A stretch of 64,000 nt of DNA, taken from NCBI GenBank assembly GCA_000320545.1, contig ADNK01001131.1, forward strand, positions 53,961-117,960, written 5' to 3'. The first letter of the stretch is position 1. Every line of letters starts with the position of its first letter. Below are positions 35,499 through 43,895 of the stretch, in pieces. A program made the position numbers and the translations under genes. Below the pieces are notes generated by a model. The model had not been told where the DNA came from and ran no database searches. It worked only from the letters and a program-made list of their open reading frames with translations. This DNA is from Bigelowiella natans CCMP2755. Lineage: Eukaryota > Protista > Cercozoa.

Positions 35499-36386
35499 GA
35501 GGAAGAGGAGAAGGAGAATCAAGAAGAATAACCATGAGGTCGCATCAGGAAACAGGGACATTATGTGAATTACGTACTACGCATGTATGATATAGTATGA
35601 GATATATTACTATTGGGTAATCGAGAGTCATCTCGGCGTCGTCAACATGATGAAATATATTACTATTGGGTAATCGAGAGTCATCTCGGCGTCGTCAACA
35701 TGATGAAATATATTACTATTGGGTAATCGAGAGTCATCTCGGCGTCGTCAACATGACCTCCCATAGAACCGTCATAAGGGTAGAAATTTACGATTGCTGC
35801 CTCACTCTAACGTTAATATCAAGACAGAAGAAGGAGGAGAAGAAAACCAAAACATAACTCTATTTATTTCCTTCTACTTGTTCTCCTCCTGAAAATGGAT
35901 CGAAGAAGAAGCAGCCTCCTCATGGCCACTACCATAATTCAATCTACCCGTACTATCAGTACTACTACTGCTGCTGCTGCTACTACTACTACTACCTTCA
36001 CTTTCAAGCCCACGCGTCTAGCAAGAGCATCTGCCATCGAAGCCTGAAGAAGAAGGAAGAGAAGGAGGAGAAGGAGGAGGAGGGGGGGGCACACATACAT
36101 CGGTAAAGGAGGAGAGAAACAAAGGGAATAATATGCACCCCTTCAACAACGACATGAAGAATCGACGATAATAATGTCTTCTTCGCAAAAAGGAAGAGGA
36201 AGTGGAAGAAGGATTAGGAGGTTTTCATAATTACCAGATTTTCTGGAAAATCACTTTTCTCATTCCTAATTGATGTGATCACTGAATATACATGCTGCTT
36301 CGAGGAGGAGGGTGGTGTACAAAATGACTTTTAGTATACATGATGGCGGAATGATATGGGATTTCTTGTTCTTGTTCTTGTTCTTG

Positions 36387-36417
<31 letters not shown>

Positions 36418-36479
36418 GGTGCTGGTACTTGTGGTAAAGACGTTGAGTCCAGTCATAATGATAGCCAAGAGAGGCCCTA

Positions 36480-36520
<41 letters not shown>

Positions 36521-37413
36521 CACCGCAGCAGCAGCAGCAGCAGCAGCAGCAGCACAATGTGTGTTTGCCATCGTTTCTGAATCTGAATGAACATAGACGA
36601 CAATAAAGAACTCACCATCTCAACTTATAGAATTCTGAGTCTTTGCCTACATCATTACACTCCACCTGAGAGGATCGAAAGAAGACAAAAGAGGAATAAG
36701 TAAGTTCTGATTAATAACAATGCAAACAATGCTGCTGCTGCTACTACTACTACTACTATTACCACTACCCACCACCACCACCTTGAATAAAAGTAGGGTG
36801 ATTGCGAAGAAAACTTGAAGGGCAGACAACTCAATGACTGACTGACTCACTCACTAACCGCATTTGCCCAGTGATCGGGCTGTGTGCCGTGCAAGTTGCT
36901 TAGATTCGTGTGTGCACAGTTTGAAAACTGGGGGAGGGAGGGAGGGAGCGAGGGAGGGAGGGAGAGAAGATAATGAAAATGCAGAGGATAAAAAACAACA
37001 TGAAATTGGCGGGGAGAATCTGTGGATGAACATGGTGTTTTAGCATGGATATAATGATAAAAATAGTTATTATGATTATAGTAATAATAATCTACAAATG
37101 TAGCAGGTGGCCACGGCAATGTGTGCATTGACTCTGTTGGATGCGAAATTTTCCATGTCATTGTGACCGACCTCCTTAATGGCCCTTTTTGCCCAAAACA
37201 GCTGTTCCTGCAGGCTAAGGGCATTCTTAATAATGTATAATCCCTGAGAAGATATAAAAAGAAGAAGCACGTTATTCTCTCAGTGGTGTGCAGCGAGTGT
37301 TGTACGAGTGTTGCATGATGTTGGGTTGTAGAAATATGGACCACCTCCACTTCTGGAATCCTCCATACTTGTTGGGCATCATCCTTCTTCCGAGGAGCAG
37401 AAGAAGGCGGCGC

Positions 37414-37450
<37 letters not shown>

Positions 37451-38166
37451 AAAGCCTTGGAGGACAGAGTCTCAGATTGCACCACATTTTCAAGACGCAC
37501 GGCCCTAGATCCTTCGTACACTCTGATGATGCATGACATGGCATGGTATGGCACGTGAACGACGATGTTAAACACTTCATTAAAAGGTAGTACTACAACC
37601 AACCACCGTGAACAACCGACGACAAACAATTAGCAGCATGCGCAATGAAGAACAAATATATTGGTAGGTAGGAGGACTGCAGCTTAAATAATACTACATG
37701 TATGGACAACCGAGAGAGATCTATAACGTTGGAGAAATCCGTTTTCCTTCGCTTTTTATCCTTCCCCTTGAAAAGTATGTTTTGACAACTTAGCTATTTT
37801 TGTAGCATCGCAAGGGATATCAATCATCATTTGAGTGCTGCTATTCAGGCAAATCCTCTATAATAACACACACACGCCGTATCATTAACCTTATATAGCC
37901 TGTATCGTTTTTCAGCAATACGAAATAAATTCGTCGCCGCCGCCTAGGAAAAATAAATGTAGTATCAGAGATTTTCCTCAGCCTGCCTTCATCTATTTTC
38001 CTCATGTCCATGCATGTGTTGTGGCCTTCTTCGAAATTCGAATATCAAGCATATGTATAGGCTATGATTGTACCCCTCCTGCTTTATTTTCGGGTTTTCC
38101 CTTATCGGAAGAAGCATCATCTCGACTTGCTTTGTCCCTCCTCCTGAAGCTGCTGCCAAGCTCCAT
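33839..38166 (-). CDS. ALKBH1: Fe(II)/2-oxoglutarate dioxygenase AlkB homolog 1 (many short exons)
   Basis: Exons read FRIAEKRYRLYK..FSNVIDLS, GLYIIKNALSLQEQLFW, HTNL, LRW|ASLGYHYDWTQR, EAAIVNFY..SMGGHVDDAE, VSVSLG, GGKSKD..SGDAVIMG, RLCFHGVPRI, SRINMNVRQV. The HxD...H and R..R motifs are complete. One small internal exon was not resolved. Confidence 0.92.
35597..35755 (-). repeat. Tandem triplication of a 53-bp unit covering the ALKBH1 exon end (HVDDAEMTLDYPI) plus its GT donor
   Basis: Copies start at 35597, 35650 and 35703 (period 53) and are identical except for one base in the outermost copy. Confidence 0.95.
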
Positions 38167-38242
38167 TGAGCTTTGAGGGCAGCTACTAAAACGCAGTTGG
38201 TTTTTGTGTTGCGACATGGAAATTCATGCAAATTTTTTATTC

Positions 38243-38306
38243 TTGTCGCAATGATGTGTCAATCATCCGTCGTTCCCGGAAGAACGCGAACGAATGCCGA
38301 CGGCAA
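38243..38306 (+). ncRNA. Possible second, degenerate box C/D snoRNA immediately upstream of the main one
   Basis: TTGTCG..ATGATGT (C-like) ... CCGA (D-like) CGGCAA gives a terminal stem with one G-U pair. TGTCAATC partially complements SSU rRNA GAUUGACA. It is short and both boxes are imperfect. Confidence 0.3.
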
Positions 38307-38312
38307 CCAACC

Positions 38313-38419
38313 ACTCGCAATGATGATCTCGTTCACGTTGATGAAGCTCTAGCAATTTGCTGTCATCAGCGAAGGACAAAATTGCAGACAGGGCAACAGA
38401 TTCCCCTTTCTGAGCGAGT
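38313..38419 (+). ncRNA. Box C/D snoRNA, predicted guide for 2'-O-methylation of LSU rRNA (AAGGGGAAUC region)
   Basis: Perfect terminal stem ACTCGC/GCGAGT, box C ATGATGA at 38320-38326 and box D CTGA at 38410-38413. CAGATTCCCCTT just 5' of box D is complementary to the conserved LSU rRNA sequence AAGGGGAAUC(U/C)G. Confidence 0.75.
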
Positions 38420-39224
38420 CTGATTGGCCAGTCTGGTCAGTCTTTTAGCTCTTCGGCGATGCGGTGTTCTTTGATTGAATTGCGATCATCCGCCTCGGCG
38501 CCGGCGCTTGGGGCGTGAATTCCAGTCCCGCACCAAATCCGCACCAGAGCTGTGCACGAATGAAAAGGACAATGAAACAAAATTTAGAACATTCACACGG
38601 AGACTTCATGCAACTCTGCTCTGCACTGCTAGACTGAATGCCAAAAAAAACGATGTTTGTTGTTGTGGATCGAAAAAGTGATGCGGATTGCTCTGTGCTC
38701 TGTGAAGTGCCGTGGCAATGCCATCACGCACAATCCCACATCGCTTGGTCGATGACAGGCACCTTGAAGGCACATTTTCCTGAAACGCGAACAAACAAAT
38801 TGCAATGGAGCTTCAGAGCTAGAGAGTGATGCAGTGCAACGTGCACTGCTAGACTGGTGCGGAGCAGGCAGTCGATCCACCGGTCCAGACAGTCCAGCAG
38901 TGCCGCCGGCCAAACATCCCGCCAAAGCTCGTGCGTGTGCAAGGGTGACGATTTCCATCTGTGTCAGCTAGTCAGGCTTGCAGGCTGCACATTGCATTGC
39001 ATTGAACACTCATCCCACGATTTGAGATGATGCGTCACGGGTGCCGTGCACATCTTCTGTTTTGCTCATTCACGAACTTCTCCAGTTCCCTAGTTCTTGC
39101 TAGCTTGCATGTGCACATTCTTGTCAGCGGTCTGGCCGCGCCACCCACGATCAAGGAGCTGTCGCAGCATGCGCACGTCCACTCGTGCTGCACGCTAGCA
39201 CGCTGCGCTGCGCACATGCGCATG

Positions 39225-39409
39225 GAAGTTCTCAGAACTTCGGGAATCTTCGAGAAGCTTCGAGAATCTTCCAGAAGCTTCGAGAACATTCCGGAAGATT
39301 CGAGAATCTTCCAGAATCTTCGAGAGCGTTCCGGAAACTTCGGGAATCTTCCAGAACACTCGAGAGAATTTTTCGAGAGAATTCTGGAAGATTCTCGAAT
39401 CTTCGCGAA
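39225..39409. promoter_or_regulatory. Very long heat-shock-element-like array (alternating nGAAn/nTTCn, 10-bp period)
   Basis: 39239-39356 reads TTCggGAAtcTTCgaGAAgcTTCgaGAAtcTTCcaGAAgcTTCgaGAAcaTTCcgGAAgaTTC... with ~24 in-register units and a single GAG variant. A second register at 39382-39409 has 6 units. Confidence 0.7.
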
Positions 39410-40068
39410 TGCGCCGCGAATGCGCCGGAACCCAACATGCACATGCATGCAGCGCAAGTTCTCAGGTCATCAGAATTCAAACGCACACGAGACCGCGTGT
39501 TGACACTTGGTGACATCAACAGCACAGTCCCGCGCACAAAAGCTAAGCAGCTACCGCAAGCCCGCTAAAAGGTTATGAGGAAAAATTCTGGCATGTCGCG
39601 CGTTGGCATTGTGACTCATTCCAATGATTCGTCAACTCTCTAGCTCTAGCTCTGCATGTTCATTCACGTTTGGAATGCTAAAATGGTGTGCTAGCGCGCG
39701 TGATCTAGCTAGCTAATGATCCTAGGACAGACGACGATTGTGCGATCTCTCAGTCATCATTCTAGTCATTGACGTCACAATGCTAGAATGCAGTCTAGCA
39801 GTGTCTAAAGTCAAGTGCGCACAATGGCGTGCATGCGTTCAGCTAGCCACAGTAGCAGCAGCTATGTGACACATTGCATGTCTATCATAGCTTGCACAAG
39901 CACATGTACGTGAGCACACCACGCGGTCGAGATATGCATGGCATGTCAATGTCTAGATGTAGTGAATCGAAGGCTGAAATGGGACACACTACTACTGTGG
40001 CACAGCAGGATCATCGGTTGGTCGACACTAAGCTACTCCAATGAAAAAAAGATGGTATTCGAGTCATG

Positions 40069-41326
40069 TCATTTTTCAATCCTGGTGTGGCTCGAATAAT
40101 AATCATCTAGACGATTACTCAAGCAATCTAATCTTGATATCCGTTGTGACTCCATGCGCTTTGCCTCTTGAAGTTGAGTCCGTGTGTCTTCAAGGAGATC
40201 TTCTAAAGCATCCCATTGAATCTCCCTCTCCAAGGGGTCCAATGAAGGTTCCCATGGCTTTTTCAGCTCGTCGTCCCTTTTTTTCGCACGCTTGCTCATG
40301 TTCTCCTGTTCGCCAATAATAGAAGAAACTTTACGTGTTCCTGCTGCTGCTGCTGCTGCTGCTGCTGCCAAATGTCCCGCTTCCTGCTTTCGCTTCTTTG
40401 AACGTGGATTGTGATTCTTCCTCTCTCCTTCATATTTAATTGCTCCAGTCTTAGTTTTAGGTGCAACAACAACTGTTGTTATCCTTTTGGTGATCGCATC
40501 GACTGTTTGTGATATAAGGGATGCAGCAGATACCAGTGAGTACACTGTACCTAGAGAGGATGAGTCATTGTTGTATAATTGCCTTGACATGCTACAAATC
40601 GCTGCATCGAGCTTCTTCTCAGCCATAGTTTTGGCATCGTCATCCTCCCCATCACCCTCATCATTCTTAGATGATGATGATGCAGCTAGTGTTAATTGCT
40701 TTGCAATACCATCGAGCCAGGCGTTTATGGAATGGATTTGTTGTTTCGTCGTAGCACGAATCTCACGGAGACCTTTGAAGTTATCAGCGAACTCGAATTC
40801 TGTACCGACGACTTGTGTCGGCACAACAGAAGACAGTGGTGGCCATGTGTCAACCACATCCATTAGCCCTTTCTGCACAAGTTTTGTCCTGAATTCCTTA
40901 ATAGTTTCAGAATAGATCTGAAGCCATTGGTCGCAGGTATTGTAGTAGTAGAGACGATATCGCCAGCTAAGTTTTTCAACGCATTTGCGAATACAGTCAC
41001 GCAACGTACTCACGACGGGAAGTGGGTTTAGAGTTGTTGGATAACGCCTCGAGTTCTTTGCCAACCAAGTCACGTGCTCTTCGAGTAGAAGGGAACTATC
41101 TTTCGTAGGATATAAGATCCAAGTCTTCTTCTTTTCATCCTTCTTCTTCTTCATGTAATACTCAGCACCAGCTTGCTCCCTCTCATGCACGACACACGGC
41201 AAGGCCAGTATCCTAAACGCACCAATGCTCTCCCTTTCTCTTTTTGAAAGGCCGTCCAGAAGAATCTCACGTACTTTTTCTTTGACAACTCTTTTCTCAT
41301 TCTCCCGGAAAAAACTTGGTACCTGT

Positions 41327-41362
<36 letters not shown>

Positions 41363-43895
41363 GAAAAGATGATCAAATCCATGATTATGGTGATGATGAT
41401 GATGATGATAATGGATTCCTTTATCATAAACATTGCAACAATTACATACACTACAGGATTAAAACAAACAAAGCCAACAGCAGCAGTAGCTGCATGTAGA
41501 AGAAAAGGAAAAAGGAGGAGGAGGAGGAGGAGGAGGAAGGGACCTGACAAATAACTAAAATAGGGAACTTCGAAGCTGATACTGGTGCTGCTTCTGAAGG
41601 TGTAGTCACTGACTTAAGCATCTGGATAAATTGTTTCTGAATTCTCTTCTTTGTTGAACAAGAAAGCTTCTCTTCGTCAAAAACGAAAGGGACTTTCTGA
41701 TTCTTGCTAATATCATCATTCCTTTGTCCCAGTGTGCTCACCTGTAGATAAGTTGTAAAATTTCTTATAATGATGATGATGGGTTTATTAGTATTATCAT
41801 CCAACAGCACCAGTGTAGAAAGAAAAGACTTATACTCTTCTGTTTACTGCTGCTGCTGCTGCTACTACTACTACTACTACTTCCCATGGTACTGATACCT
41901 TGTTACATTCATTCTTTTCATGCAAATTGATCATGGGATAGAGAAGAAGAAAAGAAGAAAAAGAAAGAAATCTGCCCAATGTACATGTGCAAAAAGAAAA
42001 ACAGTATCATTTCAGAAAAACTGGCACGATTTGATCGCCCTTTTTTTCATTTTGGTGGATGCTTTTCTTCCAACAAATGGAGAATATCATCATCATCATC
42101 ATCATCATCACCACTAATTTCCTTTCTAAACTAATATGATTACTACAACTATGTAGTAGAAACCAACCGGCAGTCCTTCAAATAGGAAGATCCCAGCATG
42201 AACACGGCGATATTCATCTCTACTCACTGGAGGGAACAATGTCGTCCTCGTCATCATCGAGCTGGTATTAGTTGGAGTAGGAGGAGGACTTGTATAATTT
42301 TGAGGATGAGGATGACCATCAGGAGGAGGAATCTGCTCGTCTTCTCCCTGATCATTTTGGTGGAGAGTATGCAGTGCTGGAACATTGTAGACATGAGCAT
42401 TTCCTCCTCCTCCTCCTCCTCCTTCTTCTTCTTCTTCTTCTTCTTCTTTTTGTTCTCCATTCCGTTCATCAATAAGCACCGTGGAATGGAAAATCACCTT
42501 CTTCTGCTGACTCAAGGAGGAGGAGAAGGAGGACCAGCACATGCGGCGAAAACTTGGATTATTCGTTGTTGTAGTTGATGTTACGTCATAATGTATATCC
42601 AAGGCTCTCCACACCCTTGCAGTGCCATTCGAGGTACCCGTCACACCAAGCTTAAGAAAGATCCATCGACGGAGCTCATCAGTACCAATCAGATCATCAT
42701 CATCATCATCCTCATCTTTGTTCATGCCGTAGTAGTAAGAAGAAGAAGAAACCGAAGTTGTGGCACCACAGATTACCAAATCAAAGAACACGTCAATGAA
42801 TGATGATTTCTTTTGCAGGTCTGTCTCCTCGAAGTATCTTAAATTACGCTGGATTATCGCTTCTGGTGTAACTAGAGGGATTATACCATTACAATCTCCT
42901 CCTATTCTCGTTCTTCGTTGTCGTTTTCTTGTTCTCCTCCTTCTTACCATCATAATCGGGTTGTTGTTTCTAGTAGTCAACTCGACCAAACGGTGAGGGT
43001 GATGGTGATGGTGGTGATGTTCTTCTCCTTCTCCTTGTTCTTTTTTTTCTTCATCTCCTTCTTCCTGCTGCTGCTGCTGCTGTATCTTTCTCCTCATCAT
43101 CCTTTTAACCCCACCATCAATACTATTACTACTACTACTACTACTACTACTACCACTACTATGCTCTTTGCCTCCTCCTCCACCTCGAGTTTTTCTTCTT
43201 CTTTTTCCTGTGGTAAGCAGATTGTATATTGTTTCAACTTCCGTAAGTCCTGATAACACTGTGCTCCTTCCACCATAGTTTCGAGTGAGTGCTGAACGAT
43301 TGTTAAGAATCCTTTGCTTTGATGCTTTGGTTTCTTGGGCCAAATACCTCATAACATGCCAATAAGGAAACATGAGAAATCTATCCGCAGCTGATGCCAT
43401 TTTCCTTAAACGTTCCAGATGTTCTCTTCGACGCCTTTGTTGTTCCTTGTTCTTCCAGAATACCACACCATTATAGAGCCGCTCACACGTATTTTCCTGT
43501 GCGATCCGAGCAAGATTTCGCCATTTATTCTCTACGAGGTGTTGTCGTCTCTTTTCTTTCTTTTTCCTTTCTCGAATTTGGTTCTCTCTGTGCTGCCTCG
43601 CCTTTACAGCTTTTAGCCTTTCTTTCCGTCGTTGTTCTAGCTTCCTCTGCCTCTCTTTTTCTTCTTCTTCCTGGCGTTTGAGTTTTCTTCGGCGAGCCTC
43701 TTCCCTTTTTTTAGTCTTCTCCTCTTCTATTCTCCTTCGCTTCTCCTCCTCCTCTGCCTCTCTTTCTCTCCTCTTTCTCTCCTCCCTTTCCTCCTCCTCC
43801 TCCTTCTTTTTCCTCTCCACAGCAGCATGGCGTTGTCCAGGAGTCTAATAGGTCAGATCATAATTATACCATCATATACGAATATGTCTAATGTA

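What the first reader, a model, noticed from the sequence alone, without database searches (positions are those of the whole stretch)
39225..39409. Giant phased heat-shock-element-like array (~30 nGAAn units) in a CpG-retaining island upstream of ALKBH1
Seen: GAA and TTC alternate in exact 5-bp register for ~120 bp (39239-39356), with a second 6-unit register after a short break. GAA/TTC are nearly invariant while the 2-nt spacers vary (gg, tc, ga, gc, ca, cg, ac), which simple slippage would not produce. CpGs in TTCGAGAA and TTCCGGAA are intact although neighbouring intergenic DNA looks CpG-depleted. Established: HSF trimers bind inverted nGAAn repeats, functional HSEs usually have 3-6 units, and transposon-borne HSE arrays are known from C. 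elegans Helitrons. Inference: this is either a super-HSE that could make ALKBH1 (ATG ~1.06 kb away) or the neighbouring snoRNA heat-inducible, or a mobile element that spreads HSF sites.
Basis: partly seen in the sequence, partly recalled or inferred. Interest (0 to 1): 0.88.

Follow-up and report, generated by a model that had tools for sequence, protein, structure and literature searches.

The report
Retrotransposon LTR remnant with heat-shock-element array
The long row of heat-shock-factor binding motifs is not a host promoter built for ALKBH1 but part of the leftover end repeat (LTR) of a young, transcribed copia-type jumping gene; this family keeps such rows under selection and scatters them through this alga's genome, and heat induction is still untested.

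Summary
The array is real. It has 24 in-phase nGAAn/nTTCn units (23 perfect) at 39239-39356 and 8 more (7 perfect) at 39372-39409, against 0 expected by chance.

It is not a host-built element. It lies inside a 449-bp LTR (39122-39570) flanked by a 5-bp target-site duplication, ATTCT. A 9-nt primer-binding-site stub follows the LTR, so this is a solo or internally deleted remnant of a Ty1/copia retrotransposon.

The genome holds at least 71 LTRs of this family. Full elements are 6.5-7.1 kb, their LTR pairs are 99.3-100% identical, and most have long open gag-pol frames. Every LTR examined carries the array, with 18 to 32 units.

Changes private to one copy hit GAA/TTC cores as often as spacers. 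Changes shared between lineages are about 7-fold depleted in cores. So the cores are selected in the replicating element and decay neutrally after insertion.

The host encodes HSF genes. Family RNA is abundant in RNA-seq contigs, but no contig joins this LTR to its own flanks.

The CpG-island claim fails, and the ALKBH1 super-HSE reading is unsupported. HSF binding and heat induction are untested.

The scan had already found this family on at least 8 other pieces of this genome. The closest parallels are ONSEN, Macrostomum LTR elements and Caenorhabditis Helitron HSE clusters.

The parts
39117..39121 (.). Left copy of the 5-bp target-site duplication, ATTCT
   Evidence: Identical ATTCT directly flanks both ends of the insertion. 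All 8 full-length paralogues also have 5-bp TSDs, one with a single mismatch.
39122..39570 (+). 449-bp LTR of a Ty1/copia retrotransposon family (TGTCAG...GCTAAAA), older lineage; the nearest relative is a solo LTR on contig C514 at 91.6% identity
   Evidence: At least 40 scored matches at 76-91% identity; 71 LTR start motifs in the genome; alignment of 26 distinct LTRs; best identities.
39225..39238 (.). Off-lattice GAA/TTC leader (GAAgTTCtcaGAAc), conserved in all LTRs
39239..39356 (.). Main HSE-like array: 24 alternating nTTCn/nGAAn units in exact 5-bp register, 23 perfect
39372..39409 (.). Second HSE-like block: 8 units, 7 perfect, 3 bp out of phase with the main array
39404..39427 (.). 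11-bp tandem duplication (CGCGAATGCGC, 2.2 copies), shared with some other old LTR copies
39410..39570 (+). Rest of the LTR downstream of the arrays (presumed end of U3 plus R and U5; boundaries not mapped)
   Evidence: Position within the LTR. The transcription start site could not be mapped from contigs.
39571..39579 (+). 9-nt stub of the primer-binding site (GGTTATGAG); in full elements it continues as ...CCTCAAGAGG
   Evidence: RNA contigs of other copies run on past 39579 with CCTCAAGAGGACTT.
39580..39584 (+). GAAAA, probably the last bases of the lost 3' LTR (family termini are ...GCTAAAA or ...GCTGAAA); marks an internal deletion
   Evidence: Inference.
39585..39589 (.). Right copy of the target-site duplication, ATTCT

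Best explanation
Window 39122-39584 is the remnant of one insertion of a Ty1/copia LTR retrotransposon. It consists of a complete 449-bp 5' LTR, 9 nt of primer-binding site and about 5 nt of the far end, bracketed by the duplication ATTCT. The interior was lost by deletion. The nGAAn array is a standing part of this family's LTR. It occupies the upstream half of the LTR (from about nt 105), where LTR promoters and enhancers (U3) lie. The most likely function is a multi-trimer binding platform for the host's heat-shock factor(s) that drives or boosts transcription of the element from the LTR, as HSEs do in ONSEN. Array length changes by in-phase 10/20-bp slippage, while selection on the replicating lineage keeps the GAA/TTC cores intact. 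Once a copy is inserted, and especially once it is dead like this one, the cores decay neutrally. Shown here: the identity as an LTR remnant, the family structure, the selection pattern, the presence of HSF genes, and family transcription. Inferred: HSF binding, heat induction, and any effect on the AlkB-like gene about 940 bp to the left or on the snoRNA candidate.
For: About 450 bp (39122-39579) recur at least 40 times in the genome, often as same-strand pairs 6.1 kb apart. Between such pairs lies a 1480-aa ORF with Retrotran_gag_2, Pol_BBD, rve and RVT_2 in copia order. LTR pairs are 99.3-100% identical, apart from one pair (C2046) at 95.2% whose only difference is a single 20-bp gap in the array with no mismatches. 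5-bp TSDs occur in 8 of 8 full copies and in the window copy, a PPT (..ATGGGGGCG) precedes the 3' LTR, and a PBS follows the 5' LTR. The genome has 71 LTR starts, in subfamilies with 416-bp and 358-bp LTRs plus older solo LTRs with TSDs. Every one of 61 LTRs examined has the array, from 10+8 up to 32 contiguous units. On 26 distinct LTRs, singleton changes per column are 0.22 in cores, 0.27 in spacers and 0.20 in the non-array LTR. Shared changes per column are 0.05, 0.35 and 0.22 (core vs spacer p=2.5e-6; MK-like 2x2 p=0.004). Of 254 six-unit arrays in the 91-Mb genome, 218 lie in the 61 LTRs examined. The genome encodes HSF DNA-binding domains at 2 loci (97.7 and 54.8 bits). Sixteen runs, from among 8 studies, hold at least half of the element's words. 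The four runs laid are RNA, because they show GT-AG spliced joints. In them the LTR bins reach summed word depths of mostly 10^2-10^5 (one of the 16 bin-run values is 0) against 15-115 for neighbouring genes, and contigs run from the LTR into the PBS and interior. Precedents: ONSEN has 5 units per 49 bp (PMC13602373); Macrostomum LTR elements have 1-4 HSEs that are needed for more than 250-fold heat induction (PMC12801592).
Against: No heat-shock data, HSF-binding data or transcription start map exists for this organism in what I could reach. The family's RNA is already abundant in RNA runs whose conditions I do not know, so the array may act constitutively or through another factor. Contig depth is a poor measure of expression, and the roughly 70 copies inflate it. 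The core/spacer labels were taken from the alignment itself, which slightly favours cores looking conserved; the singleton class serves as an internal control. LTR termini are TG...AA rather than the usual TG...CA.
Confidence: 0.7

Rival explanations
1. Exapted enhancer. The element brought the array, but this remnant now makes the AlkB-like gene (5' end at or beyond 38182, about 940 bp to the left) or the snoRNA candidate (38243-38419) heat- or stress-responsive. This is compatible with the best explanation and adds a host-level function.
For: The array is still nearly intact (30 of 32 units perfect) although the copy is 8-12% diverged from its relatives. HSEs act in either orientation and at a distance of about 1 kb (established knowledge; Helitron-borne HSEs do rewire neighbouring genes, PMC6927752). 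The insertion sits in the promoter-side intergenic region of the AlkB-like gene.
Against: Private mutations across the family hit cores as often as spacers, so there is no sign of host-level constraint on inserted copies. The AlkB-like gene shows ordinary depth, and no contig links it to the LTR. In Macrostomum, only two solo LTRs of the strongly induced families lay within 2 kb of host genes, and those genes were only mildly upregulated (PMC12801592). A single locus cannot show selection.
Confidence: 0.15
2. The array serves something other than HSF. It could bind another factor that recognises GAA/TTC dyads, or act as a long hairpin in DNA or RNA (for example for packaging, dimerisation or small-RNA production).
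For: The 185-nt stretch folds at -86.6 kcal/mol, z = -6.8 against shuffles, and weak miRNA-precursor-like Rfam matches fall on it. Family RNA is abundant in runs where no heat treatment is on record.
Against: Any nTTCnnGAAn lattice is self-complementary, so the fold is a by-product. A hairpin would need complementary spacers, but spacers are the fastest-changing columns of the LTR (0.35 shared changes per column). The 18-nt inverted match in the window's second block is private to this copy. All Rfam matches are far below their gathering scores. The exact 5-bp alternation of GAA and TTC is the defining geometry of HSF sites.
Confidence: 0.1
3. A host-evolved super-HSE dedicated to ALKBH1 or the snoRNA, or a neutral minisatellite with no function.
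For: Position upstream of the AlkB-like gene. Period 10/20/40 tandem structure, and in-phase indels between the two LTRs of a single element.
Against: The array lies within an LTR bounded by TSDs and is shared with about 70 paralogous LTRs. Lineage-level changes are 7-fold depleted in cores relative to spacers, which a neutral minisatellite would not show.
Confidence: 0.03

Closest known systems
ONSEN (ATCOPIA78), the heat-activated Ty1/copia retrotransposon of Arabidopsis and other Brassicaceae
   Same: It is a Ty1/copia element with clustered nGAAn/nTTCn units in the LTR that recruit host HSF for transcription (PMC13602373, PMC8376061). Solo LTRs can carry the motif next to host genes.
   Different: ONSEN has five units in 49 bp. 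Here there are 18-32 in-phase units per LTR, and one subfamily has an extra 6-8-unit array inside the element. The host is a chlorarachniophyte alga (Rhizaria), and the polyprotein is at most 32% identical to any protein found. Heat induction and HSF binding are shown for ONSEN but untested here.
HSE-bearing Ty3/Mdg4 and copia LTR retrotransposons of the flatworm Macrostomum lignano (PMC12801592)
   Same: LTR families independently acquired canonical HSEs; the HSEs lie upstream of the start site and are needed for heat induction.
   Different: Those elements have one to four canonical HSEs per LTR. The window LTR has 23 overlapping matches to the same regular expression. The superfamily and the host kingdom also differ.
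Helitron-borne HSE clusters in Caenorhabditis (Helitron1_CE; PMC6927752)
   Same: A transposon carries dense, tandem, overlapping HSEs and accounts for essentially all high-density HSE clusters in the genome. Here at least 218 of 254 six-unit arrays lie in this family.
   Different: Different transposon class. This element has LTRs, 5-bp TSDs, PBS/PPT and gag-pol, not rolling-circle Helitron ends.
Drosophila copia and yeast Ty5 priming from an internal part of tRNA-Met (recalled from memory, not checked in a paper here)
   Same: The PBS is complementary to the anticodon stem-loop, not the 3' end, of a tRNA-Met-like gene: 14 nt match two genomic sites that form a perfect CAU anticodon arm.
   Different: The full tRNA genes could not be read, so initiator versus elongator identity and the cleavage site are unknown.

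Membership tests
Ty1/copia LTR retrotransposon (this locus as its remnant) | Two direct long terminal repeats flanking an internal coding region in paralogous full copies | tested here: met
   15 LTR pairs, spaced 6.1 or 6.74 kb, 99.3-100% identical; one pair is 95.2% because of a single 20-bp array indel.
Ty1/copia LTR retrotransposon (this locus as its remnant) | Short target-site duplication directly flanking the insertion | tested here: met
   ATTCT at 39117-39121 and 39585-39589. 5-bp TSDs in 8 of 8 full copies (one with a single mismatch) and in several solo LTRs.
Ty1/copia LTR retrotransposon (this locus as its remnant) | gag, protease, integrase, then reverse transcriptase (integrase before RT) | tested here: met
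   PF14223 at residues 105-223, PF22936 at 374-457, PF00665 at 608-703 and PF07727 at 958-1208 of the 1480-aa ORF of L046. The window copy itself has lost this part.
Ty1/copia LTR retrotransposon (this locus as its remnant) | Primer-binding site next to the 5' LTR, complementary to a host tRNA, and a polypurine tract before the 3' LTR | tested here: inconclusive
   The PBS GGTTATGAGCCTCAAG follows all 5' LTRs and is complementary over 14 nt to a tRNA-Met-like anticodon arm found twice in the genome. The whole tRNA genes could not be fetched. The tract ..ATGGGGGCG precedes all 3' LTRs.
Heat-shock element / HSF-driven promoter (ONSEN-like heat-activated LTR) | At least three contiguous inverted nGAAn units in 5-bp register | tested here: met
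   24+8 units in the window; 18-32 in all 61 LTRs.
Heat-shock element / HSF-driven promoter (ONSEN-like heat-activated LTR) | The host encodes HSF with the canonical DNA-binding domain | tested here: met
   PF00447 hits at C1696 (97.7 bits) and C2910 (54.8 + 32.7 bits, split by an intron).
Heat-shock element / HSF-driven promoter (ONSEN-like heat-activated LTR) | Motif cores conserved by selection relative to spacers | tested here: met
   Shared changes are 0.05 per core column against 0.35 per spacer column, while singleton rates are equal.
Heat-shock element / HSF-driven promoter (ONSEN-like heat-activated LTR) | Motifs lie upstream of the transcription start (in U3) | tested here: inconclusive
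   The array occupies about nt 105-290 of the 449-bp LTR. Only assembled contigs were available, and they cannot show starts.
Heat-shock element / HSF-driven promoter (ONSEN-like heat-activated LTR) | HSF binds the motifs, and transcription rises on heat shock | not testable with these tools
   No heat-shock or ChIP data were found for this organism.
Helitron carrying HSE clusters | Helitron ends (5'-TC...CTRR-3' with a 3' hairpin), insertion without a TSD, and a Rep/helicase gene | tested here: not met
   The carrier has LTRs, 5-bp TSDs and gag-pol.
CpG island protected from methylation decay | CpG retained against a CpG-depleted, hypermutable background | tested here: not met
   Flanks have observed/expected 0.89-0.94. 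Singleton changes: 12 at 74 CpG C/G sites against 38 at 154 other C/G sites.

The most novel reading that the evidence does not exclude
The array is a selected 'super-HSE'. By stacking up to about ten HSF trimers per LTR (and more inside the element), the retrotransposon out-competes host heat-shock promoters for a small HSF repertoire. Its roughly 70 scattered LTRs, including remnants such as this one beside an AlkB-like gene and a snoRNA candidate, then form a transposon-built heat-shock regulon in a rhizarian alga. That would be a third, independent origin of HSF hijacking by LTR elements and by far the largest natural HSE arrays in an LTR.
Probability: 0.25. Interest if true: 0.7.

Novelty: new member of a known kind. 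Interest (0 to 1): 0.45.

Why it matters
Transposons that carry heat-shock elements are known from plants (ONSEN), a flatworm and nematode Helitrons. The 2025 flatworm paper counts only two experimentally validated LTR cases. This family would add a third eukaryotic supergroup (Rhizaria). Its arrays are about six times longer than ONSEN's, and the sequence shows that the element, not the host, maintains the motif. That makes it a clean system for two questions: why an element would need 18-32 units, and whether scattered solo LTRs rewire host genes under stress. For this locus the practical point is corrective: the 'super-HSE upstream of ALKBH1' is a transposon remnant, and any regulatory role for the neighbours is unproven.

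Tried and rejected
- **Rfam scan of 36000-42000 at E<=1.** It returned only sub-threshold, palindrome-driven miRNA-like matches on the array and nothing for the snoRNA candidate.
- **Helitron reading.** Rejected on structure.
- **Hairpin function.** The strong fold is explained by motif self-complementarity, and the spacers are unconstrained.
- **Polyprotein homology search.** No relative above 32% identity, so the copia lineage could not be named.
- **Pfam on neighbouring ORFs and on ORFs overlapping the LTR and 3' region.** Nothing relevant.
- **One Pfam call failed on frames containing stops.** Single exons of the AlkB-like gene are too short for Pfam.
- **HSEs upstream of host HSP20/HSP70 genes.** For the same reason 10 of the 71 LTRs and a complete subfamily-B element were not read.
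- **The one six-unit array seen outside the family (C273, L014).** It lies near a nucleoside-hydrolase-like ORF, not a chaperone.
- **Literature searches.** They found no heat-stress RNA-seq for Bigelowiella and no alga-borne HSE transposons.
- **Consensus.** Column-majority states of the LTR alignment were used only to count changes.

Full report
**1. Observation**

Reading 38400-40800 and re-phasing the sequence in 5-bp steps confirms the array.
- From 39239 to 39356, TTC and GAA alternate in exact register for 24 units. 23 are perfect; the exception is GAG at 39324-39326.
- After a 15-bp break that shifts phase by 3 bp, a second block of 8 units (7 perfect) runs 39372-39409.

This is far beyond chance.
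- A six-unit pattern hits 11 times in the window, against none in 100 dinucleotide-preserving shuffles.
- Chains of four or more units occur twice, both here, against 0.18 per shuffled window.
- Tandem Repeats Finder sees periods of 10, 20 and 40.
- Across the twelve 10-bp rows of the main array, the six core positions are invariant in 71 of 72 letters, while the four spacer positions vary.

**2. What it is**

A search of the window's own genome (91.4 Mb, 3736 contigs) with 38450-39600 shows that only the part 39122-39579 is repeated. It gives at least 40 scored matches at 76-91% identity. Many lie as same-strand pairs about 6.1 kb apart.

Eight such pairs were fetched.
- Each is a pair of direct repeats of about 416 bp, 99.3-100% identical. 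The exception is one pair (C2046), whose only difference is a 20-bp gap in the array.
- Between the repeats lies one long ORF. In L046 it is 1480 aa and carries the copia-type gag, Pol beta-barrel, integrase core and RVT_2 domains in that order.
- All eight are flanked by 5-bp target-site duplications (one with a single mismatch).
- The 5' LTR is followed by GGTTATGAGCCTCAAG... and the 3' LTR is preceded by ...ATGGGGGCG.
- Seven of the eight have an ORF of at least 1455 aa.

The element is therefore a young Ty1/copia LTR retrotransposon. Its LTR termini are TG...AA rather than the usual TG...CA.

The PBS is complementary over 14 nt to a sequence found at two other genomic sites. That sequence forms a perfect anticodon arm with a CAU anticodon. 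This suggests priming from the middle of a tRNA-Met, as I recall for Drosophila copia and yeast Ty5. The tRNA genes themselves could not be read.

**3. The window copy**

| Coordinates | Feature |
|---|---|
| 39117-39121 | ATTCT (left target-site duplication) |
| 39122-39570 | LTR, 449 bp |
| 39571-39579 | First 9 nt of the PBS |
| 39580-39584 | GAAAA, which resembles the family's own 3' terminus |
| 39585-39589 | ATTCT again (right target-site duplication) |

This is one insertion whose interior and nearly all of its 3' LTR were deleted. RNA contigs from other copies diverge from the window exactly at 39579/39580 and continue with the rest of the PBS.

The closest relative is another solo LTR (C514) at 91.6% identity. 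The young subfamilies are 88-90% identical. So this is an older, dead copy.

It is oriented on the + strand and points away from the gene on its left.

**4. Family-wide picture**

The 20-nt LTR start motif occurs 71 times in the genome. They fall into three groups:
- Subfamily A: LTR 416 bp, elements spaced 6.1 kb, 32 contiguous in-phase units.
- Subfamily B: LTR 358 bp, spaced 6.74 kb, 10+8 units; one element has 12+8.
- A tail of older solo LTRs with their own TSDs and intermediate arrays (16+10, 24+8, 28+8).

Every LTR examined has the array, and it starts at the same place (about nt 105-110) in nearly all of them; the few exceptions carry insertions further upstream in the LTR. LTR pairs of subfamily B are 99.4-100% identical, so both subfamilies are recent.

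In one element (C2046) the two LTRs differ only by a 20-bp, four-unit indel inside the array. Array length therefore changes fast and in phase.

Subfamily A elements also carry an internal (TTCCAGAATG)x3-4 array about 390 bp before the 3' LTR.

The 61 LTRs examined account for 218 of the 254 six-unit arrays in the whole genome. Among the 50 places listed, only one (C273) lies outside the family.

**5. Selection test**

I aligned the 26 distinct LTR sequences and classed columns as core (GAA/TTC), spacer or non-array.

| Column class | Mean pairwise diversity | Singleton changes per column | Shared changes per column |
|---|---|---|---|
| Core (GAA/TTC) | 0.036 | 0.22 | 0.05 |
| Spacer | 0.120 | 0.27 | 0.35 |
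| Non-array LTR | 0.080 | 0.20 | 0.22 |

Diversity values are; singleton and shared counts are.

Splitting the changes by frequency is more informative than diversity alone.
- Singleton changes mostly arose after insertion. They are equally frequent in the three classes.
- Changes shared by two or more distinct LTRs were inherited through replication. They are strongly depleted in cores (core vs spacer p=2.5e-6; MK-like 2x2 p=0.004).

So GAA/TTC is under purifying selection in the replicating element and decays neutrally in inserted copies. Spacers are the freest columns of the LTR.

Two caveats apply. Column classes were read from the same alignment, and one old copy (L082) aligns poorly and contributes many singleton core changes.

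**6. Host factor and expression**

The genome encodes HSF-type DNA-binding domains at two loci.

Sixteen public runs, from among eight studies, hold at least half of the element's sampled words. Their records do not say RNA. However, the four runs I laid on 36000-41900 show six joints with GT-AG ends on the minus strand, so they are RNA assemblies.

What the laid contigs show:
- The LTR bins have summed word depths of mostly 10^2-10^5 (one bin is 0 in one run), against 15-115 for the two neighbouring genes.
- Contigs run from the LTR into the PBS and interior of other copies.
- Intergenic DNA next to the LTR is uncovered in three runs and at depth 4.9 in one, so DNA carry-over multiplied by about 70 copies cannot explain the signal.
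- The family is transcribed, but contigs give no start sites, no strand and no reliable level, and the growth conditions are unknown.
- No contig joins this LTR to its own flanks.

**7. The neighbours**

The spliced minus-strand gene to the left reaches at least 38182, about 940 bp from the LTR.
- One of its exons (35714-35806) gives a weak match to the AlkB-type dioxygenase family (E=0.011).
- Another exon reads GLYIIKNALSLQEQLFWAKRAIKE.
- 'AlkB-like' is plausible but not proven.

The gene to the right (minus strand, contigs 39858-41742, ORF 40069-41202, no Pfam domain) presents its 3' end to the LTR.

It lies within a 747-nt contig in one run.

**8. CpG claim**

| Region | CpG observed/expected |
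|---|---|
| Array | 1.61 |
| Rest of the LTR | 1.16 |
| Immediate flanks | 0.89 and 0.94 |
| Whole window | 0.77 |

The flanks are not depleted. Singleton changes in the family are no more frequent at CpG C/G sites (12 at 74 sites) than at other C/G sites (38 at 154 sites). The high CpG content is simply what repeated TTCGAGAA and TTCCGGAA units give.

**9. Mechanism and rivals**

The best reading is that the array is the element's own HSF-binding enhancer or promoter, maintained by selection for transcription and resized by in-phase slippage. The window holds a dead copy of it.

The rivals:
- An exapted enhancer for the neighbours is possible but has no support beyond position.
- A non-HSF function such as a hairpin is suggested by the strong fold (-86.6 kcal/mol, z = -6.8). 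That fold follows automatically from the palindromic lattice, and free spacer evolution contradicts it.
- A host-built super-HSE or a neutral minisatellite is contradicted by the LTR context and by the selection test.

**10. Comparison and novelty**

- ONSEN LTRs have five units in 49 bp (PMC13602373).
- Macrostomum LTR families have one to four canonical HSEs, which are required for more than 250-fold heat induction. That paper counts itself as only the second validated LTR case (PMC12801592).
- Caenorhabditis Helitrons carry tandem, overlapping HSE clusters and hold essentially all high-density clusters in those genomes (PMC6927752).
- With the flatworm paper's regular expression, the window LTR gives 23 matches; the family's LTRs give 12-23.

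No paper in the library describes such an element in Bigelowiella or in any other alga. The polyprotein has no relative above 32% identity among 5.8 billion proteins.

The organism is a chlorarachniophyte by its nearest protein match, Lotharella globosa at 58%. The species name Bigelowiella natans comes from earlier notes of this scan and fits the genome size; I did not verify it.

The scan had already found and followed up this family on at least eight other pieces of the genome, with the same reading. I reached mine before seeing those notes. New for this locus:
- the singleton-versus-shared test;
- the negative result on neighbour linkage.

Verdict: this is a new member of a known kind. It is quantitatively extreme and experimentally untested.

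Noticed in passing
L046:6710-6747 (and the same place in 6 of the 7 other subfamily-A elements): A second, internal HSE-like array, (TTCCAGAATG)x3-4 (6-8 perfect units), lies in the non-coding stretch about 390 bp upstream of the 3' LTR. It is absent from the subfamily-B 3' region that I could read (L015) and from L053.
   Followed up: partly
L051 / L070 vs L071 (G000:C2046:59921 and 66005): The 5' and 3' LTRs of one element differ by a single 20-bp (four-unit) in-phase indel in the array and by no substitutions. Array length therefore changes faster than point mutation.
   Followed up: partly
G000:C1772:114259-114279 and G000:C2965:96845-96865: Two identical sites form a perfect anticodon arm with CAU and are complementary to 14 nt of the element's PBS. 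They are probably tRNA-Met genes that prime reverse transcription from an internal position. The DNA could not be fetched.
   Followed up: partly
L014:1501-1528 (G000:C273:59315-59342): This is the only six-unit perfect nGAAn array among the 50 listed places that is not in this retrotransposon family. The neighbouring ORFs look like a nucleoside hydrolase and an ankyrin-repeat fragment, not chaperones.
   Followed up: partly
Rfam gives no snoRNA match there at E<=1.
   Followed up: partly
window 39858-41742, minus strand: An expressed gene with a 377-aa ORF (40069-41202) and no Pfam domain. It has a (CTG)9 run at 40341-40368 encoding poly-Ala and a likely intron at 41318-41546. Its 3' end faces the LTR.
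   Followed up: no
window 39122-39127 and 39564-39570; all family LTRs: The LTR termini are TGTCAG...GCTAAAA (or GCTGAAA), that is TG...AA rather than the usual TG...CA.
   Followed up: no
window 36857-38182, minus strand: The AlkB-like gene is built of very short exons (about 50-180 nt) separated by introns of 101-349 nt with GT-AG ends, as seen in spliced contigs from four runs.
   Followed up: partly
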